A stretch of 64,000 nucleotides of DNA from Ramazzottius varieornatus (GCA_001949185.1 BDGG01000002.1:1209481-1273480), one strand, 5' to 3'; positions 586 to 37,918 are shown, counted from the stretch's first letter. The notes: a model not told the origin generated them from the letters alone. Numbers and translations: made by a program.

Positions 586-3500
586 AACCAGTCGCGAAAA
601 AGACTGAAAATTCGGAGCCTTCCTCGGCATCATCTCCGTGTGACACCCAATGGTATTTGTCTCAAATAAAGGGTTCGTTGGAGGACGAGAATGTGGACGG
701 TAAGAAACTAAAGAAAGTGGATTTCTTACGAGTTGATTGTCTTTCTTGATTGATGCAGTGCGAATGTGCAGTACTGTACTGCGAAATGCACCGCTGTATT
801 TTTCTTTCCTTTTCAGCGGACACGATATCAAGCATCGACTTCAACGAAGATGGCGAGTTTCTGGCCGCAGGAGACAAGGGAGGGAGGATTGTTGTTTTTA
901 AACGGGACGTTGAGGTAAACAGTGCGGGCGCACCACTGCGCCAGATCAGTACCCGCGCTAATCATTTTGCTCTTGGTTGTTATTACGGCAGGATAGGCTT
1001 CCTCTGTTTCTTTCTTTCATTTTGTCTAACTGTCACAAGGAAGGCGACACAACGGCGGAGAAACTGAATGGCGAGGATCGCAGCGTGAAATACCAGTTGT
1101 AATTCTAATGATGTCGCGAAGGAGCGAAAGAAGGAAGAGGCAACTGCGCCAGTTTTACCACTGTCATTACTTTCCATCACGCAACGCTTTTCTTCCCTCT
1201 TTTCGCAGCACCTACATCGCGACTCGTGCTCAAGGGCCAAAGTGAGGATCGGGAGAAGGACCCAGTGATTCTCTTTAGATTCTCTTTGATCCTTTAGAAG
1301 GCCGTTGCTTACGGGCTCTCTAAGGGATCAAAATGGTCCGGCCGCAAAATCGATTTCCCATCTCTTCACTTTTCGCCCGCCTCTTTCCCCTTCCTCTGCC
1401 CAACTTATTACCTTCAATTAGTAGTGCTACGAAATCTCTTCCCTTTCTTCCTGAACGGCGATTTACTCGATTAGGCCATTCAGTGCTTCCGCTTTGCCCG
1501 ATTACCGCCAAAGCTGAGCTGTCAAGCCATATGAGACACTCTAGTACTGTAGAAATCGTGCTTCTTTCCCATCCAGATAACCAAGGTTGGACCAGATTTT
1601 CTATTTGCACAACCTAATGACGATCTCTTGGCTTTTGTCAGTCCGTGTTTTGTTTCTTTCAGAATAAGCAACCTTTTGGAAGGACGGATTATAATGTCTA
1701 CAGCACCTTCCAAAGTCACGAGCCGGAGTTTGACTATTTGAAGAGCGTGGAAATTGAGGAAAAGATCAACGACATTGCCTGGTTGAAACGACGCAGCCCG
1801 GCGTTATTTCTCCTTTCAACAAACGGTACAAATTTTGCAGCGATGTCCATTGAGCACATTTCGAAGCGCAAAATTGGCATTTCGCATAATATTTCATTAG
1901 TGTTTTGAAAGAGTCCGGATTTTATCCGGGGATTTTACTTTTGCAGATAAGACTATTAAGTTATGGAAGATATCGGAGCGGACGAAGCGCGCAGAAGGGT
2001 TCAACCTCCGGGAAGAAGACAGCGGGAAGATCAAGCATCAGCGACTGGAGAGTCTGCGCATTCCCGCACTGAAGAATGTCGACGGAGTGGTGGAAGCCTC
2101 GGCCAGGAGAGTGTACGCCAATGCCCACGCCTACCATATCAACAGCATCGCCGTCAATGCCGACCAGGAAACTTTCCTCAGCGCCGACGATCTCCGTATC
2201 AACATTTGGCACACTGAGTCGAAAAACCTTTGTTGGAGTACGTTCTGTGGAATTTGTCGGAATGTTTAGCAGTATCTCACGTACCTGCATACAAGAACCT
2301 ATTGGAGTCTAATGGGTACTTGTACGCAGGTGTGGGCATTACGAACCTGCACACATGAGCCTATTGGTTTGTAATAGCTATGTGTATGCAGGGGTGGGAA
2401 TACAAATGAGTGTTCAGTTAATCCTCTTCAAATGTAACGTTTGATATGTATTCTGATCGGTGGCTGACGTATCCTTTTTTTGCTTACAGATGTGATTGAC
2501 ATAAAGCCGGAGAATATGGAGGATTTAGCCGAAGTGATAACGTATTCGCGCTTTCATCCCACCGAAAACAGTGTTTTTGCGTTCAGTAGCTCCAAAGGAG
2601 TTATCAGACTTTGTGACATGAGGAGGTCGACACATCACGAGCAGCATGCCAAGCGTAAGAAGAACGGGAGGATACCTTCCAATAATTTTTTGTCTCACAA
2701 GGAATTATTCAGTAGGGAGGAATGGGAGTTCGACAGACAAATTCAACAAGTTTGATCTCTCCAGTGGCGCACACAGTCTGTTCAAGTAACGGAAAGGGTA
2801 CGCCACTTGGAGACATTGATCTTGCCGAGTTTGATTGTTTTTACAAGTGGCGCGGGTCTTCATTGCTGTCGGCTAGATACTTGCGCAACTTGAAATCTCG
2901 ATAAGATCACTTTTCCCAAGCGGCGCGTCCCAAAGCGTGCGCCACTTTGGAGCAATGATCCTGTCGAGCTGTTTGCCGAGCTTGCATAAAGGTCTGGAAG
3001 TGAAGGTGAAGTTTTGGGTCAGGCATCATTTTACTTATTCATTTTCCGTTGCAGTTTTTGCGGATACGGAGGAGGCGGGAACGCGCAACTTTTTTTCGGA
3101 AATTATTGCCAGTATTGCTCATTTTACCTTTAGCTATAACGGCCACCTGATGGCCGCACGCGACTACATGCATGTCAAGCTGTGGGACCTTCGCATGGAG
3201 ACCAAGCCTGTCGAGGTTTTCCAAGTCCATGAATACCTCAAAGCCAAGCTGTGTACTCTCTACGAAAATGACTGCATCTTCGACAAATTTGACTGCACAT
3301 TTTCACATGATGACAAGTAAGAACTACCAAAACACCAGAATGACAAAATTCTTCACCAAAACAAATTTCCGCAAACAGACTTCACAAGACTGTTTCCAAG
3401 TGGCGCATGTTTCAGTATTTGGCCGACAGACTGCGTCACTTTGGAAAACCTTGTCGAGTTTGATTATCTTCCCGAGTGGCGCACGCTTGCATGCTATTGG

Positions 3501-3897
3501 CGGAATGAGTGCGCCAGTTTGAAAACGAACTTTTCGTGTATGTCATGCTATCCCTGCACGACTATTCGGAGAAAACATTCGGGATTTTCTTTTCAGGGCG
3601 ATTTTAACGGGTTCGTACGGCAGTCTTTTCCGCGTTTTCGACATTGCTTCGAAGAAGGACGTGACATACGAAGCGTCGAAAGACGTGACGAAAGTGAAGG
3701 CCGTTCTGAAGTCCAAGAAGATCATCACGGGCAGCGATCGCTTGTCGGCGCAGAAGCGGAAGAAGGACGAGATTGCCACCGATAGTCTGGACTACAGCCG
3801 CAAAGTCCTACACGCCAGCTGGCATCCGAAAGAGAACGTCCTCGCTCTGTGCTCCACCAATAACCTCTTCATGTTTGAAGACGCCCATCAACCTTAG
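586..3897 (+). CDS. PPP2R2: PP2A regulatory subunit B55 (PR55/twins family, WD40); exons ~586-699, 817-914, 1663-1825, 1947-2237, 2490-2654, 3055-3316, 3597-3897; first coding exon not located
   Basis: The spliced translation gives [124 protein letters not shown] and [12 protein letters not shown], all hallmark B55 blocks. GT-AG introns are in consistent phase. Confidence 0.97.
2755..2950. repeat. Intronic ~80-bp inverted-arm unit array (3 units)
   Basis: TGGCGC arms at 2765, 2848, 2921 and GCGCCA-type arms at 2798, 2881, 2937. Confidence 0.85.
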
Positions 3898-4208
3898 TCA
3901 TTCTTTCTTTCCTATTACTTGTTGTTTCCACCTGTGTTTTCATCCATAGAGTATAGAATAATATTCTACGCATGTGAAGCCTCTCTTCGCTTGTTTGCTG
4001 GACACGCTCTTTCCCTCGAAGATGCATTGTGAAAGATAAACGGGGCTTTTGTTGTTTCCACAGACAGAGTGAATGATATGAGGAGAGAATTGTTTTCCTT
4101 TTTAAAAGCTGTAATATTTTTACTGACGGATAAGTTACATTATCTTATCGACAGTTCCTTTCATGTCAGACTTGAGCGTTCCGTGCTGTTACCTACTGAA
4201 ACGGCTCT

Positions 4209-4972
4209 AAGGTTGACCTGAGAGCCCAAACACCCTTCAACTTTTACCATCGAAAGTACTCGGTTGCCTACTGTTTGAAGGCACTCACAACTGCGGGTAA
4301 AATCTTTTGGCCGCAGGCCGAGGCGGCTGGAGGTATTAAAGAGGTCCGTAATTTGGCCCTTTTTCTACGAAGTTGCTAATCAGGTCCGTGCTCGGCACAA
4401 CCTTGACTGATGATCTATGAAAATTTCGTAGAAAACGGGCCAAATTGCGGACCTCTTTTAATCCTCCAGCCGCCTCTGGCCCAAGGAGAAAATTTTGAAT
4501 GCGTGGAACCCTCTGGATATGAATGTGGAACCCTTAACTTCTCGACATCTATTGGGCTTCGTATCGTCCGAAACATCCAGCACCAAAAATGCATCGAATG
4601 TACTTTTCCACACTTCTGCGGCTTCAGGCTGGTGAAACGAAAATTTTCGTTTTTGTCGATTTTCCGTCGATGAGTGGTCCATCACGAAAACTCCGTCGAA
4701 AATGAAGTTTTTGATTCGCCAACGCGAAACTGCAAGTGTTTAGCAGTCCATTCAATGCATTTTCTGGTACTAGAGATATCATGTTTCGGACGATACGAGA
4801 CCCAGTAGAGATGTCAGAGCTCCAAAAGTGGTATCAAGAAGGTTCCGCACTCAAAATTTGCTCCCTGGCCAAAAGATTTTTACCGGCAGTGGAGAGTGCC
4901 TTCAAACAGTAATCAGAACCGAGTACTTTCGATGACAAAGTTGAAGGATGTTTGGGCTCTTAGGTCAACCTT
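4209..4972. mobile_element. Fold-back MITE with ~77-bp TIRs and nested internal palindromes
   Basis: AAGGTTGACCTGAGAGCCCAAACA..GAAGGCACTC at 4209 is mirrored by GAGTGCCTTC..TGTTTGGGCTCTTAGGTCAACCTT ending 4972. Internal inverted pairs at ~4321-4475 and ~4478-4870. Confidence 0.85.
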
Positions 4973-5421
4973 CGTTCACTCACAAGGGCCAACTCGAGCA
5001 AGTCAAGCACAAATAACGGAAGTATAACTACATATCAAGAACAATTCATCTTTGTTTTGATTTCCTTTACAGATGTGACGATGCTATGCACTCTTGCTGT
5101 TATTAGTGACCACGCCATACTTGCGGCCCAGCCCCTCAAATTGTTCCATAAACTTTGGGCGGAAGCAGCTCGAGCTAACATGCAGCCGGCCGACCGCGTG
5201 CGTCTGTTTCACTCATAACGACAGTTTCTCGTGTACGACGTACCCATTAGACGTGTACGATCGAACTCAGAGCCCACCCACAGATCCAGTGACGCGCCAA
5301 ATCATCATACAGTACAGCATCGCAAATGAAATGAAACACTGTATATCTTCCACCTGCCATGAATACCACGAAATAAAAAATAGACGTTCAAACAGGAGAA
5401 ATAATTTACTAGACAGTCGTA

Positions 5422-10445
<5,024 letters not shown>

Positions 10446-10523
10446 TCATGCAAAGACAACAGGACATCAATCAGGTGGTAAAGGAAGAAGACTGTTGCGG
10501 AATGCTGACAGTCGGAAAGAAAA

Positions 10524-11956: not shown

Positions 11957-12020
11957 GAAGAACCTCCGACCCGAAGACCTTTTTCCCCGAAGAACCTCCG
12001 ACCCGAAGACCTTTTTCCCC
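11957..12020. repeat. 31-bp tandem duplication with degenerate flanking copies
   Basis: GAAGAACCTCCGACCCGAAGACCTTTTTCCCC occurs twice in tandem. Confidence 0.85.
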
Positions 12021-12117
12021 TAAGAACTCTTCTGAGAAGCCTCTAACTGATGCACCGCCAAAACGGTCCAGTGACTGCTTTATCGCGACCAAACTCATCG
12101 TCGTTCACGTACCGTTC

Positions 12118-20400: not shown

Positions 20401-23400
20401 GTAAACGAAGATGTTATAATAGGTTCAAAAAAATCTACCCGGATTCCGAACACCGAATTTTACTCAGCTGCGAATCTTTATTTAAAGGTGAACCCGGCGC
20501 GGATGGAGTTCCCGGCGAGAACGGTCTGCCTGGTCCACAAGGCATGAGCGGCGAGAAAGGTCAACCCGGTGTAACGGTAGAAGGACCTCTAGGGTTCGCT
20601 GGTCGTGACGGTCGACCCGGGTTTTACGGGCCCAAAGGCAGCGTCGGTGATCGGGGTCCGTCTGGTGAGAAGGGTGAGGCTGGCACAATCCTCCAGCCTC
20701 GTTACCCTGGCGGCATTGGTGTCAAGGGTGGCATCGGCGACACTGGGGATCGTGGTCCAGATGGCATGGATGGCGAAAACGGCCCGAAAGGCCAACGCGG
20801 AGATGACTGCGGTGTCTGTGGAGGTGGGCGACCTGGCTGGAAGGGTGATCAAGGTGACGTCGGCTATGATGGACAACAAGGTCCGGCTGGAGCTCCAGGT
20901 GCAGCGGGACCGCAAGGTCGCAAAGGCCCGGAAGGATATCAAGGACCTCGTGGCTTGGACGGAGACAGAGTAAGTGAAGCGAGAGGTCTAAGAATATCCA
21001 TTATTACGAGGGAAGGTTGTAAAGTTAGCCGTCCAGGTTCGTCTGTTTTCTCCTAGTTACTCCCAAACATTTATGGATAGATTGATAGATGAACCAATGG
21101 GCTGTCGAGTTGTACCAGGTACAGTCAACTTGAGGGTTCAGAGAATCCAAGAGATCCGCAATTAAAGCAACGTTAGAATCCCATGTTAAAATGCTAAGAC
21201 TGACGAGCAAACACTCAATCAACCAACACACACTACGGCCGACGTAAGATCTAACACATCCTCAGCATTTGGTAATTCCTCGTAGCTATCGCATAACGAC
21301 GTCATGGTCTCTTCAGCTACGATCAGGGTTGCCAGGTCTTTCATAACACGTTGTTCCTCTTTTTGGGAAAAAAATGATCTTACTTGCGATGTATAATAAG
21401 AGCGGAACAACTGAGACAAGCGATCGCTCGAAAACAAATACTGATAGCTGTAGGTTCAGAAATATCTGATGCATTCAGCTACAACAGAAGAGGAGAAATG
21501 ATTGATTGGTCGATCGCATATGAGGGAGGGGCAATCAACTTTTCAACTTCTCTTCTCCCAAAAATTTGCCCCATATTTGAATGGAACTAATGTAGTCTGA
21601 GTTTTACATTCAAGCGGGTTTCTCAAGGAATATGTGAAACAATATCGTAGAAAAATATTCGTTCTGGTTAAGTCAAAGTTGTGGTCATGTGTGAAAACTT
21701 TTGGTACACGCACGATGGGTAATTATCGGACAGTAAAAAATATGAGACAGGCGGAAACGATGGCAAAACGGAAAATCAACCGTAGAAAAGTGTCGAAAAG
21801 TGCAGTGGGATGCTTCTTGAACTTCGCGAACGCGAAGAGTTTACGGGGATGGTGACGCATACAGTACACGCTTACTGTGACGCAATTCGCGAAATTGAAG
21901 AAGCATTACAGTATTATTGTGGATCGGTCGAGTAGGTACGTCCTTCCGTACCGCCGTAGCGAATAGGCCTGTCCCATCATTTTTACTGTCCCATAATTGA
22001 TTACCTATCGTGCGTGTACGCTGACTCTGACTCTGATTTGCAAAACGGATTTGCGAAACGGCAGAAGTCCTTTTTTGACCATCGTTTTGCTTGCAGGGTG
22101 TCGACGGTCGCAACGGCAGCAAAGGTTCGAAGGGTGAAGGCGGCGAAGCCGGTATTGTCATCTTCCCGCCGACAATCGCTCCAGAGAAAGGCGCCAAGGG
22201 AGACCGTGGCTTGGACGGAGCCCAAGGTGCTCCCGGCGGACCTGGACGACCAGGCGCGCCAGGCTTCCCTGGATTACCGGGTCAAACAGGCCAGAAGGTA
22301 GGCCGTGTTTTAATGCACCACTGCACCACCCGGTAATACTTGTGGCAATCGTTTGACATTCTTCCAGGGCGATCTCGGTGACGATGGCAACGCAGGCCTA
22401 CCAGGCGTCCCCGGTCTGCCTGGCCGACCTGGAAATCAAGGTCCTCCAGGTCCTCCCAGCCTGCAAGGACCTCCTGGCCGCAAGGGTGAAGGCGGTAATC
22501 GTGGTCTGCCTGGCTTACCCGGTATCAAGGGCGCTAAAGGTAGGTCAATTCGGTGTTTCTTCCACGTTTTTCCAGAGATAAAGCAAGCAAAATTTAATAT
22601 TTTCAAGTGGCGCACGAATCCATTGCCACTGGCGGTAAGCACTAGCCGTCCGAAATAATTATATTTGGTGGCGCACGCTTTCATTGTTATATGCGGAAAC
22701 CATGCGCCATATGAAATATGGTTCTTTTGGCCTAGCTCGTAGTTCTTCCTTCGGATTCTGGACGTGTGATCGTTTTCTAGGTGAAACCGGCCCCTTGTTT
22801 GCTCAGAGTGAGATCCTTATACCTAAAGGAGACCAAGGTTGGCCTGGTCGACCTGGTGCACCAGGCTATGATGGGGCTAAGGGATTCAAAGGAGACAGTG
22901 GCTTGGCTGGTGAACCTGGGTACAAGGGGGCCATGGGCGATGAAGGATACCCTGGCCGTCCTGGAATTCTTGGGGCTATCGGTGAACCTGGTTACCCTGG
23001 TGTGAAGGGCGATGATGGCTTTATGGGACTTCCTGGGCTGCCTGGTCGACGTGGCGCATCTGGCCAATTCGGTCTCAAAGGCATCAAGGTACGAAAATCT
23101 GCACCCAGAAGAAACGCTGCAAGACTCCTTCTTGAGTTTATCAGAGGAGATTCCAAAAGTACCTGTAGAATAGTCCACATTTTCCCATGTTTAAAAGAAT
23201 AAATTCATGTGTCTAGCAATGACTATCCAAAGGAATTTTTCTTGTTTGTTGGTATCGTGAATGGCAGATTACCGTTTTGCGAATAGTCGAATGATTTTTA
23301 ATATGACACAGTTAGAACATCATGGCATAAGATATATTTGATTCGCTTTCTCCTAGGGTGATCGTGGCGAGGACGGTCCAAGTGTCGGTATCGACGGAGC

Positions 23401-26400
23401 TCCTGGTCGTGAAGGTCCATGGGGTCCGAAAGGTGCTCGTGGTGAGGCTGGTGATGACGGGCCACGTGGACCAGACGGTATCGCAGGTCGACGCGGCTTG
23501 CCTGGTGACTCTGGACGACCGGGTGTCCCTGGTCCACCAGGTCTCAACGGACCCAAGGGTGATATCGGTGAAGTCTTCGGAGCTCCTCCAGGCCCAAAGG
23601 GTTTCGCTGGAGAGTCCGGCTTCCCCGGCTTCCCTGGTGGAAAGGGAGATCGTGGAACAAACGGTCTACCGGGTATCAACGGATTGAAGGGCGTCAAAGG
23701 TGACCTCGGTGCCGGTGGCCTACCTGGTGCTCCGGGTTTTCCTGGTGCTCGCGGCTTAGCTGGTCCTCGTGGTTTGGATGGTACACCTGGCTTTGGAGGT
23801 ATGAAAATGAGAACCAGAACAGAATACTCTTCCCCATGTCATAACATGTTGCAGTGTAGTGACTGCTCAACTTTCGAGTACCTGCATACAGCTCACAGTG
23901 TACCTGAAATGGCTTTATGGTATGCAGGTACTTGCGAAATGGCGCATCGAACTTGTTTAATTCTACATGGCGGATGTTATTGATACGTCGTAGGTTTGAA
24001 GGGAGCCAAGGGCGACTACGGTTTCCCAGGACGACCGGGCCCTAACGGGTTCCCCGGAATACCTGGCTTGGCTGGAGCGAAGGGTTTCAAAGGCGACGCC
24101 GGTCTGGATGGTCGAGATGGCTTCCCTGGTGTCTCTGGTCTGAAAGGTATGGCTGGCACACCCGGAATGCCTGGTTTACCTGGTCAGCGCGGAGAAAGCG
24201 GAGGCGAAGGCACGCGTGGACCCAAGGGCGACATGGGAGATGCCGGTATGTGGACATAAAACAGCCAATGGTGGAAAAACTAACAGTTTGGTTGCACACC
24301 AATACATTAAAATACATTAGAGAAACGTCTGGAATCACAGACGCTGATTCCACACCTTGGAGTGACTATACCACTATCATTTGCGGTTAAGAGCGTTGTG
24401 GTAGTCTTCGCTGAATTCTGTGCATTAATGCGATCGAATTCAACCAATAATTTTACATTAATCGACGTAGGCTATCCCGGTGCACCGGGCTTCCCCGGTA
24501 CACCAGGCCGACCTGGGCTGAAGGGAGCCCGCGGTGAAGACGGCGCAGTGATTGGTGGCGCCGTCGGTCTGCCAGGCTTCGCTGGTCGACCTGGCATTCC
24601 TGGAGCTCCTGGAACCAAAGGCGAACGTGGAGACATGGGCTTCGAAGGGCTTCCAGGTATTCGCCGTCCACAACCGGCATAATCAGCCTTCTTTCCTTCG
24701 GGAATGATTCGAATACTAAAACTTGATGTGTGGTATTTTAGGCGTTAATGGTATCAAGGGCGAACGTGGTGACAACGGTCTGCCTGGTAGACCTGGTCTG
24801 CCTGGATCGATTACGGCGAAGGGTGCCAGAGGCGACAGTGGCGCGAATGGACGACCTGGAACACCTGGAGCTTCGGTAAGTTGTCGATAACGGGTATGCC
24901 AAAGTGTTGTACTTGGGATGCCAGTATAACGTGAATTTTCTTACAGGGGGATGATGGCTTAGCAGGCTATCCAGGCGTGAAAGGTCTAGCCGGCACTCCC
25001 GGCATGCCTGGTCTACCTGGTGCACCAGGTACCCCCGGTGTCAAGGGCTTCAAAGGTGATGAAGGCTTCGCTGGACTGCCTGGTCGACAAGGAGCTCCTG
25101 GCCGTCGCGGTGATAGCGGCCTGCCCGGTCTTGGTGGTGTCAAAGGCGCGATTGGCGATGACGGTCTCGCTGGCTTCCCGGGTCTCAAAGGCATGAGCGG
25201 AACACCTGGTATTCCAGGCCGACCTGGACTTGATGGACGGATTGGCGGAGCTGGTAAGATTCTTTGGGACGACGACAAAGCATTTCATCCAACCGCTGTT
25301 CCCAAGTGGCGCACACTGTCTGCCGGTCAAAAACGTGCGCCACCTTGGTACGATGGAATCAACCAGGTCGTTTTCCCCAGGTGGCGCACAATCTCAGGTG
25401 ATAACTATGAAGAGGTGCGCCACGTGGGAGACCGATCTGGAGGAAATCTTTTGTCGACGACCGTTGTTCCCTTGGTTCTTTAGGTTTTATGTTTTGATTT
25501 GCAAACGACGATACTCAGTACTTTGATATTTACAGGCACTCCTGGCCGACCTGGTGAAATTGGTGAGCCTGGTCTAACTGGCCTGTCCCGCAAGGGAGAA
25601 CGTGGTGCTGCTGGATTCCCCGGTACTCCTGGTCCCAACGGTAATATTCCTTACTCTTGGGTCGAAAGTCTTCAACGCTGTATCTGGTCTCTGAAGCAGA
25701 CGTCTATATTCTTCAGGACTTGCTGGAGCAAAGGGTGATCAAGGTTATCCAGGCCGCAATGGCCTACCCGGTGCACCAGGCAAGCCTGGATATGGACCTC
25801 CCGGCCAGAAGGGTTTCGCCGGAAACCCAGGCCTACCCGGCTATGCTGGTAAGTCCCGTATTTCCCTTTTCACAACTGCCCCTTGATTGAGTGCTCGAGT
25901 GGTTTGAATGAGCGAGAATTTCCCAAATTAGAAGAAACCATGTCAAATGCAAAGAAACGATCTGACAACCCACCTAGAGTTAACTGGTGGTCTCCCCATT
26001 GTTCAACCGGGAAGACGTATTACGATATTCTCCTCTTTTGCTTACAGGACGACCAGGACCAGTCGGCCCACCAGGTCTACCTGGTGCTCCGGGTTCAGCT
26101 GGCTTCAAGGGTGACGCTGGTGATTACGGTTTACCAGCTGTTGGAACGGAAGGACCTAAGGGCGCTCGTGGTGACGCGGTACGTACTTGTCCGCTCTGCA
26201 GGACATGCGAGTATGTTTAAAGTCAACCTGATGGCTTTTATAGGGTGTAAATGGATTCCCCGGACAGCCAGGTCGCAAAGGTCCACGTGGCGACGACGGT
26301 ATCCCCGGCATCGGCGGACCAAAGGGACCGATCGGCGATGAAGGTTACGCTGGTCGTCCTGGTCAGGCCGGTTTCGGCGGTGCAAAGGGAGCTAAGGGTG

Positions 26401-28196
26401 AAGCTGCCCAACGCGCCATGTCTCAACCCCGAGCTCCAGGTATCAAGGGTTACAAGGGTGACCAAGGCTCCCCTGGAGAGAATGGCCGAACTGGACAACC
26501 CGGCATCCCAGGTTGGTGTGTCCTCTGTTCAAGGTTACAGTCCACATCGACTCAACTATGACCACGTTATACCTTCGTTTTTCAGGTGCACCTGGTCTGA
26601 AAGGAACACGCGGTGAACTTGGCCAAGATGGTATTCCGGGTCTGCCTGGTCTTCCTGGTACTCGAGGCGAAGACGGACTTCCGGGCCTCAAAGGTGGGTT
26701 GAACAATTCACATTTGTCCGCCTGCGACGTCGGTAGAAAGATCATCCAGATTCTTCTCTCAAGTGGCGCACGCTTTAGGCAAAAAGAACGAAGACGTGCG
26801 CCTTTTGATGGGAAGCATTCAAACCTGACGTGAATGACTTCCAGGTGGCGCACGCTCAGTGCGATATTGGCTGGTGGTGTGCGCCACTGAGGAAAATAGT
26901 TTTATACCTTTCGTTTGCCGGCCTTCAATATGTCAGAGAGCTTTTGAATGTGGTGTGAAACTGAATCTTGTTCAGGTACTGCCGGTATCGTTGGCTACGA
27001 AGGCCAACCCGGTATTCCTGGCTCCCCCGGTCGACCTGGACCTCCGCCTAAGCCTCGTGGATTCGTCTACGCTGTCCACAGCCAGACGGAAGTGATTCCA
27101 CAGTGTCCTGGTGGAACTTCCCGCTTGTGGACTGGTTACTCTATGCTGTTCCTTCAAGGAAACTCGAGAGCTGCTGGTCAAGATCTCGGTATGAACTCAG
27201 CCTTTCTCTTTTTTTCTTCCAAAAGGCGGTCTCTTCATACAATCTTCCACGTAGGTGCACCCGGAAGTTGCATGAGGAGATTCAGTACAGCTCCTTTCAT
27301 GTTCTGTTCCATCCTGAACACCTGCAACTATGCCAACCGAGGTGACTACAGCTACTGGCTATCCACCGAAGCTCCCATGCCCATGAGCATGGAGAACATT
27401 TTCGGTCAAGATATCCAGAAATACATCAGTCGCTGCTCGGTCTGCGAAACTGACACCCAGATGATCGCAGTTCACAGTCAAAGTCTGCAAGTACCGCAAT
27501 GCCCTGCTGGATGGCAAGCAATGTACCCCGGCTATTCCTTCGCCATGGTGGGTAGCACATGATTCATCCACATAGAAAACAAAGCCTTTCATTTGGAATC
27601 GTCCGATCAAGTACCCCGATTTCTCATCCAGTGTGTTTCGGTCGTATGGCACACTATAATAGAAACCAGGGCCTAATAACCCGCCAAGCTATGGACAGGT
27701 ACCTTGGTTTCTGTCGCGATGTGCCATTTTATTCATAAGGTACACTGTAGTAGAAACTAAGGGTGACGAACTGATCGGGCTGTGATAAAGTACCATGGTT
27801 TCGGTTTCAACGTCTCACCATGGTGTTTTCTACGAGTGGCACGGTGCCAGTGGTAATTTGTTTGAAATTCTTTTGCAGCACACGGCAGCTGGCGCTGAAG
27901 GTAACGGCCAAAGTCTGGTATCGCCCGGTTCCTGCCTGCAAGAGTTCCGTACGCAGCCCTTCATCGAGTGTCACGGTACCGGCGGCTGCAACTACTTTGC
28001 CACCACGCTAAGCTTCTGGATGACGACACAAGAAGAGTCCGAGCAGTTCAGCAAGCCGCGACCTCAAACGTTGAAGGCTGGCGCCGTGCGTCAACGGGTG
28101 AGCCGTTGTCAAGTCTGCCGACGGATACCGCCGGCCTTACAGATCCAGCAGCAACAACAGACACAACAGCAAAGAGAGAGGTTCCAACGTGGTTGA
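17426..28196 (+). CDS. COL4A1: Collagen type IV, alpha1-like chain (signal peptide, 7S Cys region, interrupted Gly-X-Y domain, NC1)
   Basis: Signal peptide exon 17426-17548, 7S exon [20 protein letters not shown], many Gly-X-Y exons. NC1 has [78 protein letters not shown] and ECHG are alpha1-type rather than alpha2-type. Confidence 0.95.
21240..21927 (+). repeat. ~690-bp near-identical duplicate of 44741-45421 inside a collagen intron
   Basis: Direct base-by-base match with few substitutions and one small indel. Confidence 0.92.
21707..22016. mobile_element. CACGCACGA-ended MITE (TA TSD); other copies at 54242-54438, 61893-62060, partial 45201-45421 and ~59370-59435
   Basis: TA|CACGCACGATGGGTAATTATCGGACAGT ... 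ACTGTCCCATAATTGATTACCTATCGTGCGTG|TA. The copies share an internal GGCAAAA..CCGTRGAAAAGTG core. Confidence 0.85.
25298..25430. repeat. Intronic ~80-bp inverted-arm unit array (2 units)
   Basis: CCCAAGTGGCGCAC-20-GTGCGCCACCTTGG then CCCAGGTGGCGCAC-25-GTGCGCCACGTGG. Confidence 0.85.
26755..26895. repeat. Intronic ~80-bp inverted-arm unit array (2 units)
   Basis: AAGTGGCGCAC-24-GTGCGCC then CCAGGTGGCGCAC-25-GTGCGCCACT, period 82. Confidence 0.85.
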
Positions 28197-28625: not shown

Positions 28626-30012
28626 TCAGCCGTCAGCGAACGATAGTTGGTCGCCATGAGCATTCAAACGGAGCCAGTCCAAGTAGTTGGGCACTCGTGT
28701 GTACACGCCACCGATCCCACGTGCGCAGCCCATGCCGTAGGACACGATACCGACTTGGTAATGAGATCGTCGTCGAGCATCAAAGCACACCAAGGGTCCG
28801 CCGCTGTCTCCTTGACAGGAGTCCTCCCCAGGTCGATCACCGGCACAGAGAATATTGTTCATGTTGGGTGGACCATTGGTCCCGTTCTGGATAAAACAGC
28901 TACCGCCAAATCGGGTAGGTAGGATGTTAAGGTGGACTGCTTTCAAAGGAGTTGGCCTGCGGCTGTTTCCACCACCTTCCTTCTCCAATCCGAACCTATA
29001 ATAAGTTGTGGAGGCTCGACAAACAAGCTGGACATGATCGTGTTTCCGAGTGGCGCACGCTTTCTGCTGATGACACCGAATGGTGCGTGCGCCATTTTTA
29101 TTAAATCGATCAAACAGACAGGTTGGCCGGGTTTCTTTTGACTTACCCACTAACGGAACAGATTTCTCCGACAGGTGGGACTTTGGGTCGCAAGCAAATC
29201 GGGCAGACACACGACCCACCAAAGTCAATGTCGTCATCCACCGTGAGGAGGGCGATGTCATTCTCGTTGCTGTTCTTGTTGAAGCGGGAGTTGATGACGA
29301 TGCGGATGACGTTGAACTCTTGAGCACAGCCATCGGAGATTCCGTCTGGATTTCTGATACTAGTTGTACTTGCCATGGCGCCGGTCTGAACCTTGAAGCG
29401 ATTGGGATCGTTGACTTGCCGCGTACTACAAAAAGCAACATTGATACCTGGAACGTCGGCAGATGGTTTTACCCCCTTCATTTTCTCATAGTGACGCACA
29501 CTGCAGCTAATAACAAGAGAGACGTTGGCGCCACTTGGAAAAACAATCCGGTCGGATTCGTTTATCAACGTCTAAATGCGCCTCGCGTTTGATGTTTACT
29601 TAAAGTTGATGACGCAGTGAACTGCGGTTAAGATGGTCCTTCGACCGATGATGGATCCTCCGCAAATGAAGAACCCATCACGGGACAATTTAGCCTGCCA
29701 GCAAGCATCTCCCATTCGGGCATCCTGTCCTCCAACGATTGTCGGCTCAGCCATCAATTCAGGGAAGTTTCCTTCCCGAGCACCGATCGTCCCAAAGTTG
29801 GCCAGCTGCAGCTGGAAAGGATCATCGTCGCCTCCGCGGGAGATTCCGCAAATGTCCTGCACTACGTCCCTCCTCTCAGATTTGCGTCCAGGCACAGCCA
29901 ACGCTGGCCTTGGAGGAGCAGTTATGGGTCTCCCGACTCTAATTTGACCAAAGATATCACCGAAAACACTGAAAATATAAAAGATAGCGAGGGAACATCT
30001 TATCACGCTCAT
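28626..30012 (-). CDS. Secreted trypsin-like serine protease (S1A); exons 30012-29600, 29425-29147, 28995-28626
   Basis: Signal peptide [18 protein letters not shown], then [27 protein letters not shown] (Asp at S1), GIVSYG and GVYTRV. Confidence 0.92.
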
Positions 30013-31216
30013 TTCACAAAACTGACAAAAAGTGTCGGCATCAAAGAAAATGACGGTATAAAATTTGACAAGTGCAGCCCACTTTTCAACACTTTTCATT
30101 ATACAAAGTATCTGCTGTTCTTTTCCAAGAGGTCGCTTAGTTGGTATTATCTTAGCTCGTTCGTGTCGTGTAATTCTGTTTGCTTTTGGGTTGAATAATT
30201 TGTGACTTTAGCGGTAAAATGTGCTCAATTAACAATAATTTGTCCTCCATTACAGTGTGATTGACGGTATACTCACAATTTATGGGTTCCAGTCAGCAGG
30301 TGTCGTTGGTTGAAGTCGGTTAGTCCGACGACTCACCGATGCTTTGATAAACCTTGAATAAGCATCACGATCCCGCACACACAGCAAAGCCTGTGGCAGT
30401 TGACAGTAAATTTGGTGTTATTACTGCATTGTGTCGTACGATTTTTTATTTGATGAAGCGTTTTCCCTGACTTGTCGTCCGAAAAATGTTGCATGGGGGG
30501 AACACAGAAGTTGCTTGGCTCCTGCTCTTATAGATTCCTTGTCCTGAGGGAAACAGCAAAAAGCAATCTTACATCGTCAAAGGTGTAAAATTCTCATCTC
30601 AAGCGGCGTTACTGGCTGGAAAAGTGCGCCCTTTGAGGAAACGATTTTTTCCTGTTTTTTCGCTTTCTCACTTGGCGCGCAGTTGCACTCCGATTAACCG
30701 AAAGCCTGCACCACCTGAAAAAATGATCTTGTCTGTTTCGTCTGACGGCCTTTCTAAATTTGCATATTTAATAATTCTGATTTGCGTGTCGGACCAGGAA
30801 AACGGAACAATGAGAAAGTACTCTCCACATCAAACAAAAAGTCTAATTTATGGCCATCACAAGAGATTAACCTCACTCGCTCTTGCATCAGTTGCATGGC
30901 CTGGATTGCGCATGAACGAACACCACTGATGACATTCGAACGCCCATCAATGCGTTCTTCAGTGTCGTCGGAAGAAGACGCGTTCGCGTGAACTCGAAGG
31001 TGCGAAGTACCAGTAGCTTTCACTATGCCATCGATGAACCTATTACTAACGTTTACTGCTTTTCGCCATTGTCATCATGGACGCTAGTTGTGATGCACCA
31101 AAACGCACCCCTGCAACGTTTTTCTGTTTGCTGGCCGGATGAATATTGGGCTCAAACTCAATGGTTGCACGTCATAAGCCATGCGTAGATAATTCCCTGC
31201 AGTAGGCGTTGTCTCC

Positions 31217-34200
31217 ATGGCCGGGATGAAGAGTCGGTTAATATCATTCATCTTGCTCGTGTATTTTTCGAAGCTAATCGGCGGGGAATTAGTAAAAAAT
31301 TCCGCCTCGCAGAACGGAACCTTTTTGGATTCATTCGAACCAGTTGCTTTTCGTTCCTTGTTTTCAAGACGACCACAGCAGTTTCTGAGACGCATTTCCG
31401 ACTCTTCCTCGGAGAACTTGCTCGTCCAGATGCCACTGGGGCTAAACTGCACTGCTGATGATAATGGCGCCAAAGGTTATTGCGTCGATCTGGGCCAAAC
31501 CGCTTCGCGCTGCTACGACCGCGATGTCGTCGATTCGGCGGACTGCGACCCAGCCACGCATGTCTGCTGTACGGAACGACGAGCCATCACAGTGGACGAC
31601 GTCCCTTGTGGACTCCTCGGACTGTCCATTCGTAGTCCACGAAGACCCCGACTTCCGAACGATCCAATGGTCAACGAAGTCTGCTGGATGGCCTCACTCA
31701 TGGGCATTCTAAAGTCTAACGGAATGAACCAACACGTTTGTGACGCGGTGATTTTCAACTCGACACATGTCATGACGCCGGCCGAGTGTTTATTGAGAGT
31801 GAAGAAAGATTTGGCAAAGTATAAACGTGTGCTGGCCATGGTCGGAAAACCCGTGCATGTCTTCAGGCAGTCGCTGGACTTCTCTCAGCCGCGGTGCGGG
31901 CAAGAATACGCGGTACTGATTGGAGGTGAGGTATTCAGAGCAGATGGTGCTATGCTCGGACGCATTACGAAGAAAGGCTATGTGTTTCTGCAAGTGGACG
32001 GGAATATTCTCAAGGACCGTTGCACGTGTCGCGTCTGTCTGCCGACGTATGGCGACCTTGCAGGCTTGACAACGTCATCGCGCTGTTATGCCTCGGGTTT
32101 TGTACCAACGGACAGTGGAGGTACGTAGCCTACGTGAGACATCATCTGGAAGCTCGATACTCCAACTGAACAAAAGAGTTTCCCAAGTGGTGCGAATTCG
32201 CAGTGTTTTAGGCTGGAAGCATGCGCCGCTGGGAAAGTCTATCTCGTTAGTGTCGGTTATTTTACCAAGTGGCGTATAATGAGGGTGATAAGTGGGTCCG
32301 GCAAAGGGGATGATCTTCTCTAGTTTGACTACCGTGCTCCTTCATGGTCTTACCCGGAACTCATACGATTTTTCTGCACTCGTAGAGAGGAAGAAAGGGG
32401 TGAAAGATCGCAGCAGCGCCCTGCTGACACTGGATACATTCCGAACCAATCTGGTTTCTCCATCGGCGTGTCGAATATTGCTCGCGCCGCAGAAATTGCA
32501 AGAAGAGCAAACGGAAAAAATCATCTCCACCCTCCTTTGCAGTGTCGCACCTACCTTGGGATACGGACGGTGTCTTGGGGTGATGGGTGACGGGCTGACC
32601 TGCGTTGGGGAGCACGGTCACCATTTCCTGGTCGGCCTGTCCATCCAGCCGCAAGACTGCTACTCGGCACCACGGTTATTTCGCAACGTCATCGGATGCC
32701 ATGACGGTATCGACGACCCAGACATGGCCTGTCCTCTTCCCCAGCTGACTCCGCCCGGTTTTGGAACGTGTGGAAGTCCTGGCAGTAACCATACCGATCC
32801 CTTTGGACTGGCCTTCCAGACCAGCATGGGCAAGGCCCAACGAGCCCTCAACGTGGGTCGCCGCATGCAGATGGTATCATCCTTCCCGGTTTCCGATGCA
32901 GCCTTGATGGGACGGTCGGCCTTTGCCGAATCACAAATTTCCAATCCCGGCCTGCATTTCCAGTATGACGCACTGGCAATCTGTTGGGAGGTGGCGGTGG
33001 TTGATCCGTCCCGTGGACATTGCAGTGGCGCTCTGATCTCATCGCGCCATGTCCTGACTGCAGCCCACTGCTTGACAGAGTTGGTATAAATTCCAGACCA
33101 CTGTATATTTACAGTAACGAATAACATACAGTCGTCGGGTACCAACAATTGAAGGTATACACAGGATGTCGACGCATTTCAGGGCCGATGGATCTATCAT
33201 GAGCCACCCGGAAGTTCTCCGAGTGTACATCGGCTTCGACAGCATACCTCGCGACTCGACGAAAGACTGCGAAGTAATCGCCACAGTGAAGAGCATTCGC
33301 GTCCACCCGCTGTATACCAAGCCCAGTGGTACGCGCTTCTACGATCTCAACGACATTGCTTTGATCGAACTGGACAGTCCACTCGATCTTCAGAACACCA
33401 AATGCATTTGCACCATCTGCCTGTCCAACGCCGAAACGCCTGTAGGTGGTGAACTGTGCACGTTGAGCGGTTACGGCTGCCCTACGCCCATCCTGGCCTC
33501 CGAGTCCTGCCCGGCTCCCAGGCCATGGGGCCTCACATGGTCCAACGTCGTCGTCCTGGGACCAAAAGTCTGCTCGGCCATTCCACACTTCACACCGGAA
33601 GCCATGATGTGTACGGTCTCTGATGGCGGTAAGAGACAGGTCGTTCGCCTCCTACATACGGTCGACGATTTGTTCCACAATATAGCGTGGTAAAACGCCG
33701 AGACTTAATAGATCTGTTTCGCAAGTCACGTTTCGGCTCTGAATAGAATAAAATTTCATGATTTTATACTGTGTCAATTTCTGTGCAGAAACCGTTTCTC
33801 ACTTCCGGCACAGAATATTAGCATAAAGGGATATTAGGCCGCGCGAGTTCAGCAGGGCATCGGAATTCGCGGGGCCTCTCATTTAGCCTCTACCGGATAA
33901 ATCCCGGACTTGTTTCGCATTTTTCTGGCGACAGTTTCGGGAAGACAATTATCTCTACCTAACTTCAATGCTAATTTCGGTCGAAAACAAGATGGATTTC
34001 GAGAAGGAACGAGAGTGGAAGTCAAGTGGCGCAATGTGGGAGAGGTGTGTAGCTCGGATCACTTGAAGCGCCAAGTCCAATTCGCTGATTGGTCTGATCA
34101 CGCTCCACTCCACCAAAATTTCAAATTTCGACCAAAGTGGTCAACAGTACAATCAACTCAGCTTGCACAGAATTTCAAATTCTGCGATATCAGGCAAAAC

Positions 34201-35227: not shown

Positions 35228-35841
35228 GCAAAAAGGTGTTACGAAACGCAGCCGTGCTACCTTGCGGAAACAATGCATTCCTTAATCCGGACAAGCTTTG
35301 TCATTCAGTCGGAGCAGCCTCATTCGCTCGGTCATATAGGCCACGATTCATTGCATCCGTACGGGAAGAAAAATCCGAAGAAGCCGTTTGGACAGTTTCA
35401 TGGAAATCGCCGAAAATGGACTGCAAGTGACAGCCGGAAGTAAACCGAGAGCCTTATTGGCTTCATGGTTCCATTGTTACCAAGGCGTTTCTGTTCGAGA
35501 AGAGACTTGGGTAATCGACCAAAAGATACCAAACTTGACAATAAAGAAGTTTAGGCTTTGGCATAGTGTGTGAAGGACGGAAGGAATGTGTTTCACATGG
35601 AGCAGGACGGCACACCGGGCAAAAGAAAAAACGGAAATGAACAAACAACTAACGGCTTAAGTATAGACAAACCAGGAAAGCTGCTCTGCTTGTGTGGAAA
35701 TTCTTCTTCATGAGATCAGATTAACCGGAACCTCTCTTTCCGACACGGAAATGTGTTGAAGGGATAGTAAGAAAGTTGGTATGGAGTCCTTATGGTACAG
35801 TGGATAGAATCAGAGTGGAAGCCATTCTTTCGGTGTCAGCT

Positions 35842-37918
35842 TTACAAAGCGTACATCCGCATCTGTTCTTCCAAATCTTCGTTGTTCTGATCCCCAAACT
35901 TGTCTTTCTCCCGCTCCATCAGTTTGAAGATCTGCTCCAGTTGTTGTCTTCGGGTCCTGACATAAAAAGCAGACATGATTGAATCGATTGGACGTTCGTA
36001 AAAACATGCGGCAGTTTGGCATGCGAACCACGACGTTCGCTTTTCCGAGTGGCGCACGGTTGAAGGCAAAAAGACTGAGAATGTGCGCCACTTGGATAAC
36101 AATCTCGTTGTGTTTGTTTGGTAGTCTCCCATCTGATGATGCAAACAAATCCGGTGTTCCCTCGAAAGTTCTGCGCAGTCACATGACTGGCCCATAAATT
36201 AGGCCCCAGGTGATCGTGGTTCAGTCATCAAGGCCCGGGGATTATTTCATGGGCCCGTCATGTGACAGGCTCATAAAATACCCAGAACGTTCGAGGGAAC
36301 ACAGTATGTGGAAGAATACGTACTCGACTTCTTGTAAACGCTGTTTCTCGCTCAAACCTTTCTCCATTTCGCGGGTGGTGATTTTATTCTCAATCTTCTT
36401 CAGCTCGCCTGGAATATGCATGGCGAACTCCAACGGGTCTCGGCCCTTGGCCTTTTTGGAAGTACCGGTCAAAGCTGGCATGTCGTCCATGTAGTCAGCA
36501 TCCTCTTCCTCCGCACTGTCATGGTTGAGGTTGTTACCAATCACCTCGAGCTTTTCCCCACCCCGTTCGCGAATGCTTTTCTTAATCTGTAAAAGAACAC
36601 CCTTAATGCTGTAATACTTCATGAACTTCGCGAAACACGTCATCATACGCGCGAAACATCCCTTAGGGGTTGGTGGGGCAAAATTTTCGGACCGGGGTTC
36701 AACTGTACGCGTATGATGACGTGCTTCGCGAAGTTCATGAAGCACTACAGTATAATTTGAGTCCCATTTCCGTGCTGATACAAGGTTCGAGAAAAAAAGA
36801 ATCGATCTTCCGCCCGCCGGTACATGGTTTCACCCAGATCTTCATCCCAAGTGGGGCGGTTTTCATTGTTGATGGCTAGGAGTATGTGCCACAAGGGAAA
36901 GCTATCTTGCTGAGTTTCACGTGGCGCATGCTTCCAGCCAATCACGGTATAAAAGTGCGGCGCACGGAAAGATGTCCGACTAAAGTAACTGACTTCGTTG
37001 CCGACGCTCCAAATATCCCTAGCGAGGATATTTGAAACGGAAAACCCTGTGGGGGGAGTGCACCAGAAAGCGAGGCGGTGTGGGAAAGCGTAACAAAGTG
37101 GCATGCATGCAGGCAGGGAAGCAGCGGATTTCCTGACCTGATGAGCCAACTCTGCCATGGTGTTCCTCTCATCCCCACCATCCTTAGCCAAAGACTCCAT
37201 GATGGGGAAGGCCGTAGCGAGCTGATGATAATCGCGACCGTCAACGTTGCCAGTATCAAGCAAGGGACCGAACAGGTGATTGAAGGGGCAATTAGCCGGA
37301 CCAGCAACATGTTGTGGACGGGAAAGCGAGCTGTCTTCATTGTTTACCTTCTTCGCGTTAGTCTTATCGCCTTTCTTATCCTTCTTGCCCATTTTATCCT
37401 CCAGTTTCAGGTCCAGGCGTTTCATCCACTGGTCCGTAATGCGATCCATGTCGACATTGTCTTCTTCGTTACCGTCCTCGTACATGCGTCGTCCCTCGAG
37501 ACGACGCTTCCGTAGGAGATAAACGGAGCCCACAATCCCAGCCAGCAGAGTCACGACGATAATTGAGATGTTTGTCGATGTCAAGTACATTCGGTTCGGT
37601 CGATAATAACGGACGTAGAGCCAGCTTGCCCACGAACTATACTCCCGAAAAATGTCCGAAGCCTGCAATGCAAGAAGAGAATAAGTGCAACAGCGTACAT
37701 ACCGTAGAGAAATACCGAAGAGAGTTGACCGTTGCTCAACCAGATCGTCCTTTCATTTGAAGTCGCCCAGTTATCCCCAAGGCTGACGCCAACATGTTCA
37801 GCCGAAAAGCACTGTTCGTTTTCCGAAAGACTGCGCATTATCCGAAGTCGTCATTCACTAGGTCACCGATAGCGATAAAATATAGGTATACTCCTACCAT
37901 TCTTTTGATGTCTTCCAT
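35842..37918 (-). CDS. MXRA7-like single-pass membrane protein; exons 37918-37898, 37662-37138, 36586-36324, 35956-35842
   Basis: N-terminal TM IIVVTLLAGIVGSVYLLRKRR and an acidic linker. The C-terminal LSEKQRLQEVETRRQQLEQIFKLMEREKDKFGDQNNEDLEEQMRMYAL resembles the MXRA7 helical C-terminus (recognised from memory). Confidence 0.75.
36154..36306. mobile_element. ~150-bp MITE family; copies at 57255-57393 and partial 13403-13447
   Basis: TTCCCTCGAAAGTT..CAGTCACATGAC ... GTCATGTGAC..TCGAGGGAAYACAGTA shared between copies. Confidence 0.75.
36609..36750. mobile_element. Palindromic MITE with ~43-bp arms; related sequence lies inside the hAT-type elements (~52630-52770, ~54780-54890)
   Basis: CTGTAATACTTCATGAACTTCGCGAAACACGTCATCATACGCG and its near-perfect reverse complement. 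Confidence 0.8.

What the first reader, a model, noticed from the sequence alone, without database searches (positions are those of the whole stretch)
2755..36970. Pervasive intronic arrays of an inverted motif pair with fixed 25-nt spacing: (TTYCC)AAGTGGCGCAC-N25-GTGCGCCACTT(GG)
SEEN: short arrays of 1-3 units, period 70-87 bp and usually about 80, in introns of all six genes in the gene-dense half. B55: 2765-2945, 3401-3516. SMARCAD1: 5653-5842, 6455-6576, 7634-7840, ~8890. Collagen IV: 19107-19147, 19666-19778, 22608-22709, 25307-25422, 26764-26886. Trypsin-like protease: 29051-29094, 29492-29533. Clip protease: 32188-32277. MXRA7-like: 36050-36090, 36852-36962. Further copies at ~30604-30712, 58140, 61800-61841 and 62802. 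Of 26 pairs I measured by hand, 15 have exactly 25 nt between arms and most others 20-29, although spacer sequences are barely alignable. I saw no arm pairs in coding exons or in the smallest introns. INFERENCE: conserved arms and geometry with a diverged spacer is not what a neutrally decaying MITE should show. It suggests a maintained code read by a dimeric DNA-binding factor or a conserved pre-mRNA hairpin. I know of no description of this element, and it is the best candidate for an undescribed system here.
Basis: partly seen in the sequence, partly recalled or inferred. Interest (0 to 1): 0.92.

Follow-up and report, generated by a model that had tools for sequence, protein, structure and literature searches.

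The report
Known palindromic MITE filling tardigrade introns
The motif pairs are real, but they are the inner core of an abundant 125-bp palindromic mini-transposon that is already listed in the published repeat library of the tardigrade Ramazzottius varieornatus, so this is not an undescribed regulatory code.

Summary
AAGTGGCGCAC with at most 1 mismatch occurs 35 times in the window against 0.9 expected. The genome holds 768 perfect arm pairs against 0 for the control. The spacer is exactly 25 nt in about 76% of pairs, and arrays have a period of 71-83 bp.

The arm pair is not a free-standing signal. It is the centre of a 110-125-bp palindrome, TGGGAGCTCGGCAAAC...arm-25 nt-arm'...GTTTGCCGAGCTCCCA. 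Elements carry 1, 2 or 3 internal units. I estimate about 13,000 units, roughly 3% of the sampled DNA.

RNA contigs show that these elements sit in the middle of otherwise short introns. Element-bearing introns are 280-400 bp. Element-free introns are 53-131 bp.

The consensus matches entries ramVar1-0, -16, -23 and -7 of the curated R. varieornatus transposon library (Peona et al. 2024). Those entries are annotated as non-autonomous DNA transposons, one of them as Sola.

The arms are 2-3 times better conserved than the rest of the element. They show no compensatory changes, so there is no sign of hairpin maintenance. The outer repeats co-vary between subfamilies. The most likely cause is selection acting on the element itself, with the arms as a transposase-binding site. 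A host function is not excluded.

The same family was noted by the scan on other windows of this genome.

The parts
2721..2987 (.). 3-unit element in the 400-bp intron 2655-3054 of the + strand B55-like gene. Termini TGGGAG...GCA lie at 2723-2986.
   Evidence: nhmmer hits; termini; intron from RNA contigs, GT..AG
3367..3544 (.). 2-unit element in the 280-bp intron 3317-3596 of the same gene
5610..5878 (.). Degenerate element of about 3 units in the 344-bp intron 5541-5884 of the - strand SMARCAD1-like gene
   Evidence: gene identity
6410..6618 (.). 2-unit element in the 299-bp intron 6371-6669
7590..7887 (.). 3-unit element (termini 7593-7884, 292 bp) in the 394-bp intron 7547-7940
19065..19186 (.). 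Solo element (collagen-gene region; intron not verified by RNA)
19623..19806 (.). 2-unit element
22598..22709 (.). Two partial units (cores only)
25263..25465 (.). 2-unit element
26725..26931 (.). 2-unit element
29009..29129 (.). Solo element
29446..29577 (.). Solo full-length element
30601..30754 (.). Two degenerate units
32144..32253 (.). Solo element between two long open frames (31217-32128 and 32292-33089)
36010..36133 (.). Solo full-length element. As a single DNA strand it folds into a 15-bp stem centred on the arms (MFE -24.7 kcal/mol, z = -3.4).
36817..36959 (.). One to two degenerate units
58077..58187 (.). Solo element in the copy-poor second half of the window
61756..61886 (.). Solo full-length element

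Best explanation
The arm pairs are the inner core of an old, very abundant, non-autonomous DNA transposon of the MITE type in the Ramazzottius varieornatus genome. It corresponds to library families ramVar1-0, -16, -23 and -7.

Anatomy. Each element is a 110-125-bp near-perfect palindrome. It has a 38-39-bp outer repeat (TGGGAGCTCGGCAAACAAACTCGACAAGATCGTTTTCCC), the 11-bp arm, an oriented 25-nt spacer, and the mirror image of arm and outer repeat. Longer elements of about 190 and 270-290 bp carry 2 or 3 arm-spacer-arm units. The units are joined by a 24-36-nt piece of inner flank, which produces the 71-83-bp 'arrays'.

Insertion. Shown: copies landed in the middle of ordinary short introns and were kept there. 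Inferred: exons and compact intergenic DNA tolerate them less.

Age. The family is old. No copy examined has a relative better than about 86% identical.

Arms. Shown: the arms are 2-3 times better conserved than the rest. Inferred: they are the cis-acting site, probably the transposase-binding site read as an inverted pair. Only lineages with intact arms and spacing kept transposing, while the outer repeats and spacer drifted into subfamilies.
For: Anatomy and termini. Element lengths fall into three classes: 110-126, 186-202 and 249-292 bp. Linkers are truncated inner flanks.

Abundance: 79 units in 264 kb, 3% of the bases; 47 units in 200 kb of evenly spaced samples, which extrapolates to about 13,000 genome-wide.

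Published identity: the same consensus appears as ramVar1-0/-16 (113 bp, DNA transposon, TIR 'whole', TSD unclear), ramVar1-23 (125 bp) and ramVar1-7 (123 bp, DNA/Sola, 4-bp TSD, 56-bp TIR). The arm occurs 57 and 55 times in the stored part of that library (PMC11071193). Assembly size of 55.83 Mb matches.

Subfamilies sharing the arms: 450 termini of the ramVar1-0 type and 62 of the ramVar1-7 type at up to 2 mismatches. Left and right outer repeats co-vary (z = 3.3 and 2.4; 74 of 143 double changes are complementary). Arms and spacer do not.

Insertion into existing introns: element-bearing introns are 280-400 bp and element-free ones 53-131 bp. In four of the five introns the elements lie about 39-69 nt from both splice sites. 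In intron 5541-5884 a degenerate unit ends 6 nt from the 5' splice site.

No conservation beyond 4 nt outside the termini.

The paper reports no TE family shared with Hypsibius exemplaris, which points to a lineage-specific expansion.

No Rfam family matches.
Against: No autonomous partner was identified here.

The TSD is not demonstrable. Left and right 4-mers match 1.75 of 4 positions, against 1.67 after shuffling (p = 0.34). Only an A-W-W-T/AAAT flank preference is seen.

In a cut-and-paste element one expects the extreme termini to be conserved at least as well as internal sites. Here a perfect 24-nt terminus occurs 18 times, against 768 perfect 22-nt arm pairs.

Even among the best-matching copies in the genome, the arms differ by 0-14% while other parts differ by 12-48%. 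Mirrored subfamily variation explains only about 2% of flank positions. Selection on the element is therefore an inference, and selection on copies where they sit is not excluded.
Confidence: 0.8

Rival explanations
1. Host-level exaptation. After insertion, the arm pairs are kept by purifying selection in the host. They would act either as paired sites for a dimeric DNA-binding protein (insulator-like or a domesticated transposase) or as the GC-rich nucleus of an intronic hairpin. Such a hairpin would fold the insert away so that introns lengthened 3-5 fold are still spliced by a short-intron machinery.
For: Arm divergence stays near 11% whether flank divergence is 22%, 30% or 40%. Arms are 2-3 times better conserved than flanks at both GC and AT sites. 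The same holds in terminus-ascertained copies and in best-match pairs. The 25-nt spacing is kept more often than control distances. The family looks uniformly old, with no young class. Copies are concentrated in the gene-rich half of the window: 30 in 37 kb against 2 in 27 kb. The element folds as a hairpin.
Against: There is no compensatory change in the arms: 4 of 134. No pairing excess appears in arm or spacer-stem pairs. Orientation relative to the host gene is mixed. The HMM collection is biased towards good arms, which flattens any arm-versus-flank correlation. Subfamilies with distinct mirrored outer repeats share the arms, which is what selection on the element predicts. The family is reported as not shared with H. 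exemplaris. The covariation test has little power in the arms because so few positions are mutated.
Confidence: 0.12
2. Mutational or technical cause. The stable GC-rich stem is less exposed to damage than the loop and the AT-rich, indel-prone outer repeats when the palindrome extrudes. In addition, alignment and ascertainment may exaggerate the contrast. No selection of any kind is needed.
For: The spacer (loop) is the most diverged part at about 30%. Flanks contain T-runs with 6% gaps. Some spacers have become new perfect palindromes, for example CCAATATTGG in L027. The HMM score is dominated by the arms.
Against: The contrast persists when copies are ascertained by the terminus alone. It also persists at matched base composition: GC sites are 9% diverged in arms against 29-31% in flanks. 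The transition fraction is similar in all parts, 0.53-0.64.
Confidence: 0.05
3. A eukaryotic counterpart of bacterial REP/REPIN elements, moved as single-stranded hairpins by an HUH (Y1) enzyme, or a Helitron-type derivative.
For: The architecture resembles REPINs: two conserved inverted arms, a variable spacer, and tandem clusters. No clear TSD is seen.
Against: No Y1_Tnp domain is found anywhere in the genome, while the same search rings in 6 of 14 control genomes. Helitron Rep fragments exist, but the element has long terminal inverted repeats and lacks Helitron-type ends. The published curation places it among TIR DNA transposons.
Confidence: 0.03

Closest known systems
ramVar1-0, ramVar1-16, ramVar1-23 and ramVar1-7 of the curated Ramazzottius varieornatus TE library (Peona et al. 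2024, Mob DNA 15:10; PMC11071193, supplementary file 3)
   Same: The consensus built here from genomic copies matches ramVar1-16 over its 113 bp except for 2-3 positions. Arms, 25-nt spacer and most of the outer repeats are shared. ramVar1-0 has the same arms and spacer. ramVar1-23 adds the TGGGAG...CTCCCA termini found here. Annotated lengths of 113-125 bp and 'TIR = whole element' agree with what I see.
   Different: The library gives only single-unit consensus sequences and a class label. In the text and stored supplement searched here, the following were not found: the 2- and 3-unit forms, the preference for the middle of short introns, the extra conservation of the 11-bp arms and the 25-nt spacing, and the absence of young copies.
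MITEs (miniature inverted-repeat transposable elements) in general, for example Stowaway/Tourist-type elements
   Same: Short, non-coding, in thousands of copies, with terminal inverted repeats, AT-rich flanks and an association with genes and introns. Subfamilies share the protein-binding part of the repeat.
   Different: The whole element is one palindrome with only a 25-nt unique centre. The best-conserved block is internal, 39 nt from the end, rather than terminal. Internal units are multiplied. The TSD is not demonstrable in these old copies.
Sola superfamily DNA transposons (label given to ramVar1-7 in the library)
   Same: A 4-bp target duplication is recorded by the curators. Here the 4 nt outside the termini read A-W-W-T, most often AAAT, on both sides.
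   Different: No Sola transposase gene carrying these repeats was sought or found. Three of the four library entries are left without a superfamily, with TSD 'unclear'.
Bacterial REP/REPIN/BIME elements
   Same: Two conserved inverted arms around a less conserved spacer, hairpin potential, and short tandem clusters in non-coding DNA.
   Different: Eukaryotic and intronic, with long outer inverted repeats. No Y1 (RAYT-type) transposase domain is present in the genome.
Introner elements (intron-generating transposons)
   Same: An abundant short transposon family found in introns of unrelated genes.
   Different: In four of five RNA-verified introns the element sits about 39-69 nt from both splice sites. 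No sequence beyond 4 nt outside the element is shared. The element therefore lengthened existing introns rather than creating them.

Membership tests
MITE / non-autonomous TIR DNA transposon | Short length (under about 800 bp) without coding capacity | tested here: met
   Elements of 110-126, 186-202 and 249-292 bp between the same termini
MITE / non-autonomous TIR DNA transposon | Terminal inverted repeats | tested here: met
   Left and right 49-nt halves are reverse complements in the consensus. The library lists TIR 56 bp or 'whole'.
MITE / non-autonomous TIR DNA transposon | Target-site duplication of fixed length | tested here: inconclusive
   No shared flank of 5 nt or more beyond chance. 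A-W-W-T logo outside the termini. Left and right 4-mers are no more alike than shuffled pairs, p = 0.34. Curators record 4 bp for ramVar1-7 and 'unclear' for the others.
MITE / non-autonomous TIR DNA transposon | High copy number, dispersed on many contigs | tested here: met
   768 perfect arm pairs; termini on at least 17 contigs; about 0.24 units per kb in evenly spaced samples
MITE / non-autonomous TIR DNA transposon | An autonomous element with the same terminal repeats encoding the transposase | not tested
Only termini coordinates could be listed.
Sola superfamily | Sola-type DDE transposase in the autonomous partner | not tested
   The label comes from the published curation of ramVar1-7 only
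Structured RNA or selected hairpin | Base pairs kept through compensatory changes | tested here: not met
   Partner is compensatory at 4 of 134 mutated arm positions. Pairing equals the shuffled expectation in arms and spacer stem. No Rfam match.
REP/REPIN-like element | A cognate Y1 HUH (RAYT) transposase in the genome | tested here: not met
   PF01797 gives 0 matches in the genome, while the control rings in 6 of 14 genomes
Introner element | The element itself supplies or abuts the splice sites of the intron it occupies | tested here: not met
   In four of five RNA-defined introns the elements start about 39-69 nt from both splice sites. Only the degenerate unit in intron 5541-5884 ends 6 nt from the 5' splice site. 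No conservation outside position -4.

The most novel reading that the evidence does not exclude
The 11-bp arm pair at fixed 25-nt spacing has been taken over by the host. Thousands of old copies would then be kept intact where they sit, either as paired binding sites for a dimeric protein (for example a domesticated transposase or insulator-type factor) or as a clamp that folds the insert so that lengthened introns still splice. This would explain why arms stay near 11% diverged while the rest of the same copies reach 22-40%.
Probability: 0.1. Interest if true: 0.7.

Novelty: already known. Interest (0 to 1): 0.2.

Why it matters
As found, this is routine repeat annotation. The most abundant repeat of a compact 56-Mb tardigrade genome explains why some of its introns are 3-5 times longer than their neighbours. 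It should be masked before any motif or structure search in this genome.

One point goes beyond the published library entry. An internal 11-bp inverted pair with fixed spacing is 2-3 times better conserved than the termini across about 13,000 old copies. If this reflects selection on the element, it marks the transposase-binding site of an otherwise uncharacterised (possibly Sola) transposon. If it reflects selection in the host, it would be a large-scale co-option of a transposon, which is worth one population-genetic test.

Tried and rejected
- Rfam scan of 2500-8500: only a sub-threshold miRNA-family hit, E = 0.099.
- JGI metagenome scan for the arm pair: three contigs carrying one unrelated, probably bacterial, perfect hairpin that shares the arms by chance. 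The flanks do not match the family.
- Long TSD search: the longest common flank words are no better than shuffled pairs.
- Hairpin-templated conversion of arms (an earlier scan note said the arms co-vary): rejected, with 4 compensatory changes out of 134.
- Introner reading: rejected.
- REPIN or HUH reading: no Y1_Tnp in the genome.
- Young subfamilies: the best non-self matches of two solo copies are 77-86% over most of the element (up to 89% over partial stretches), and 74% for a 3-unit element.
Orthologous introns therefore could not be compared.
- Pfam on ten open frames of 37-64 kb: nothing, so the nature of the copy-poor half remains unknown.
- A resemblance of A(A/G)GTGGCGC to the insect CTCF core was recalled from memory only. 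It fits the 3' half, not the 5' half. It was not tested and is not relied on.


Full report

The 11-mer AAGTGGCGCAC, allowing one mismatch, occurs 35 times in the window on both strands. Dinucleotide-preserving shuffles give 0.88 on average and never more than 4. With up to two mismatches per arm I find 20 arm/arm' pairs in the window. Eleven have exactly 25 nt between the arms and the rest 20-33 nt.

In the whole assembly (55,842,812 bases, 200 contigs) the exact pattern AAGTGGCGCAC-N15-40-GTGCGCCACTT occurs 768 times, against 0 for the reversed control. Of the 52 distinct copies listed, 42 are 47 nt long, which means a 25-nt spacer.

I sampled 264 kb without regard to the motif: the window plus twenty 10-kb stretches spaced every 200 kb on contig 1. 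In that sample, 90 of 105 arms have a partner with at most 3 mismatches at 20-30 nt. Sixty-eight of the 90 are at exactly 25 nt.

2. What the arms belong to.

I aligned copies together with their surroundings. The arm pair turns out to be the centre of a much longer palindrome:

(A-W-W-)TGGGAGCTCGGCAAACAAACTCGACAAGATCGTTTTCCC | AAGTGGCGCAC | 25-nt spacer | GTGCGCCACTT | GGGAAAACGATCTTGTCGAGTTTGTTTGCCGAGCTCCCA

- The spacer is not random. It has an oriented consensus, GCTTYCAGCCAATAACACTGRAAAC, with 66-72% mean identity.
- Elements bounded by the same termini fall into three length classes: 110-126, 186-202 and 249-292 bp. These correspond to 1, 2 or 3 arm-spacer-arm units.
- Units are joined by 24-36 nt that look like one truncated inner flank.
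- A profile HMM finds 79 non-overlapping units in the 264 kb, 3.0% of the bases. There are 47 in the 200 kb of evenly spaced samples, which extrapolates to roughly 13,000 units genome-wide.
- Outside the termini only four positions are non-random: A, W, W, T, most often AAAT. Beyond that nothing is conserved.
- A target-site duplication could not be demonstrated in these old copies.

3. Where the elements sit.

Transcriptome contigs from four runs of three studies, laid on 2500-8499, define twelve introns. The five introns that carry elements are 400, 280, 344, 299 and 394 bp long. The seven without are 53-131 bp.

The element accounts for almost all of the extra length. In four of the five introns it lies about 39-69 nt from both splice sites. 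In intron 5541-5884 a degenerate unit ends 6 nt from the 5' splice site.

These are therefore insertions into the middle of ordinary short introns. They are not intron-creating elements. Unit orientation, judged by the spacer, is mixed relative to the host gene.

The window's first 37 kb holds 30 units and the last 27 kb holds 2. Ten open frames in that second half have no Pfam domain, so it is probably gene-poor. I could not annotate it, and I could not test intron against intergenic density genome-wide.

4. It is already described.

The assembly size matches Ramazzottius varieornatus at 55.83 Mb (PMC5531438).

Peona et al. 2024 (PMC11071193) published a curated repeat library for this species. 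Its supplementary table contains the element:
- ramVar1-0 and ramVar1-16: 113 bp, 'DNA transposon', TSD 'unclear', TIR 'whole'.
- ramVar1-23: 125 bp, with the TGGGAG...CTCCCA termini.
- ramVar1-7: 123 bp, DNA/Sola, 4-bp TSD, 56-bp TIR.

The arm 11-mer occurs 57 times in the stored part of the library and its complement 55 times. Many library consensus sequences therefore carry it. My HMM consensus matches ramVar1-16 except for 2-3 positions, and it has the same arms and spacer as ramVar1-0.

Both terminus types are present in the genome: 450 of the ramVar1-0 type and 62 of the ramVar1-7 type, at up to 2 mismatches.

The same paper states that not one TE family is shared with Hypsibius exemplaris, and that reciprocal masking annotates almost nothing. 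This points to a lineage-specific family. The claim that the element is undescribed is therefore wrong. In the parts of the paper and supplement I searched, I found only consensus sequences and class labels.

5. Is the conservation pattern unusual?

Partly yes. Four measurements agree.
- I ascertained copies only by the outer 24 nt of the terminus (n = 21). The near and far arms are then 85% and 87% identical to consensus, against 71% for the inner flank and 72% for the spacer.
- In 33 HMM-collected solo elements the arms are 11% diverged, against 29-32% elsewhere. Arm divergence does not rise with flank divergence: 10.7%, 10.3% and 11.6% for flank terciles of 22%, 30% and 40%. The HMM ascertainment works against seeing such a rise.
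- The contrast holds at matched base composition. GC sites are 9% diverged in arms against 29-31% in flanks.
- Genome-wide, a perfect 24-nt terminus occurs 18 times, against 768 perfect 22-nt arm pairs.

The 25-nt spacing is kept in 76% of pairs. Control distances of 14 and 23 nt inside the flank keep their mode in 53% and 40% of small samples.

The family is uniformly old. The best non-self genome matches of two solo copies are 77-86% identical over most of the element, and up to 89% over partial stretches. A 3-unit element has a single match at 74%. Even among the best matches of one copy, the arms differ by 0-14% while the other parts differ by 12-48%.

6. What maintains the arms?

A selected hairpin predicts compensatory changes, and there are none. 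Of 134 mutated arm positions, the paired position is still consensus in 115, compensatory in 4 and otherwise changed in 15. No arm or spacer-stem pair exceeds shuffled pairing. This also rejects hairpin-templated conversion, which an earlier scan note on another window had proposed.

The outer repeats behave differently. They show mirrored covariation (z = 3.3 for the terminal 25 nt and z = 2.4 for the inner flank; 74 of 143 double changes are complementary). The library subfamilies differ by mirrored changes in the outer repeat while sharing identical arms.

That is the signature of several transposing lineages. Their two ends must stay alike, and their arms must stay constant. This amounts to selection for transposability, with the arms as the likely paired binding site of a transposase.

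This step is inferred. No transposase was linked to the element. Mirrored variation explains only about 2% of flank positions. A host-level constraint on inserted copies therefore cannot be excluded. I give it about 0.1.

7. Other readings tested.
- No Rfam family matches.
- The genome has no Y1 HUH transposase domain, so it is not REPIN-like.
- Helitron Rep fragments exist, but the element has long inverted termini.
- The only hits to the arm pair in JGI metagenomes are one unrelated bacterial hairpin.

8. Limits.
- The representative-protein search with a SMARCAD1 exon returned no recognisable tardigrade orthologue.
- As a result, I could not compare orthologous introns in another species, which would be the decisive test between selection on the element and selection in the host.
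- Intron location is RNA-verified only for 2500-8499.

9. Verdict.

The 'undescribed system' is a catalogued MITE-like DNA transposon family of R. varieornatus. The scan's first stage also noted this family on several other windows of the genome.

Noticed in passing
L036 (G000:C1:1684595-1685241) and L037 (G000:C1:1693354-1694000): Two stretches about 9 kb apart are near-identical reverse complements of each other over at least the 300 bp read here, including a 2-unit element. This looks like a recent inverted segmental duplication. Only two differences were seen.
   Followed up: partly
window 37000-64000: The second half of the window holds only 2 units, against 30 in the first 37 kb. Ten open frames of 114-172 aa there have no Pfam domain. 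An assembly gap (50 N) lies at 59046-59095. The nature of this copy-poor stretch is unknown.
   Followed up: partly
window 6555/7662, 7851/6534, 3449/3384: Transcriptome contigs of all four runs join different copies of the element (for example 6555 to 7662, with TAAC between and CA..TG ends). This is most simply assembly chimerism across repeats. Recombination or template switching was not excluded.
   Followed up: no
L027:301-347; also the spacers listed: Some copies with perfect arms have a spacer whose centre has become a new perfect palindrome, for example CCAATATTGG in L027 and CCAGCC...GGCTGG elsewhere. It looks as if one half was rewritten from the other. This is not a general trend.
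   Followed up: partly
L046-L048 (JGI metagenome contigs Ga0163155_10053215, Ga0163147_10025006, Ga0105048_10008640): A GC-rich (53-56%) organism, probably a bacterium, carries a 45-nt perfect hairpin that starts and ends with exactly the same 11-mers (23-nt spacer) but has unrelated flanks. This is a chance look-alike.
   Followed up: yes
G000, for example C1:7969218-7969727, C1:8073116-8073436, C8:1237774-1238238: About 20 Helitron_like_N (Rep) fragments are present. Several have in-frame stops and a few are open over 220-470 aa.
   Followed up: no
window 2625-3084: One run (X4) has a contig covering the whole element-bearing intron 2655-3054 at depth 15, against 258-480 for the spliced form. 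This suggests unspliced precursor or retained intron at a few per cent.
   Followed up: no
window 2279-2398 and 11954-12027: Unrelated tandem repeats: a 62-bp unit at 1.9 copies (77% matches) and a 32-bp unit at 2.3 copies (97% matches).
   Followed up: no
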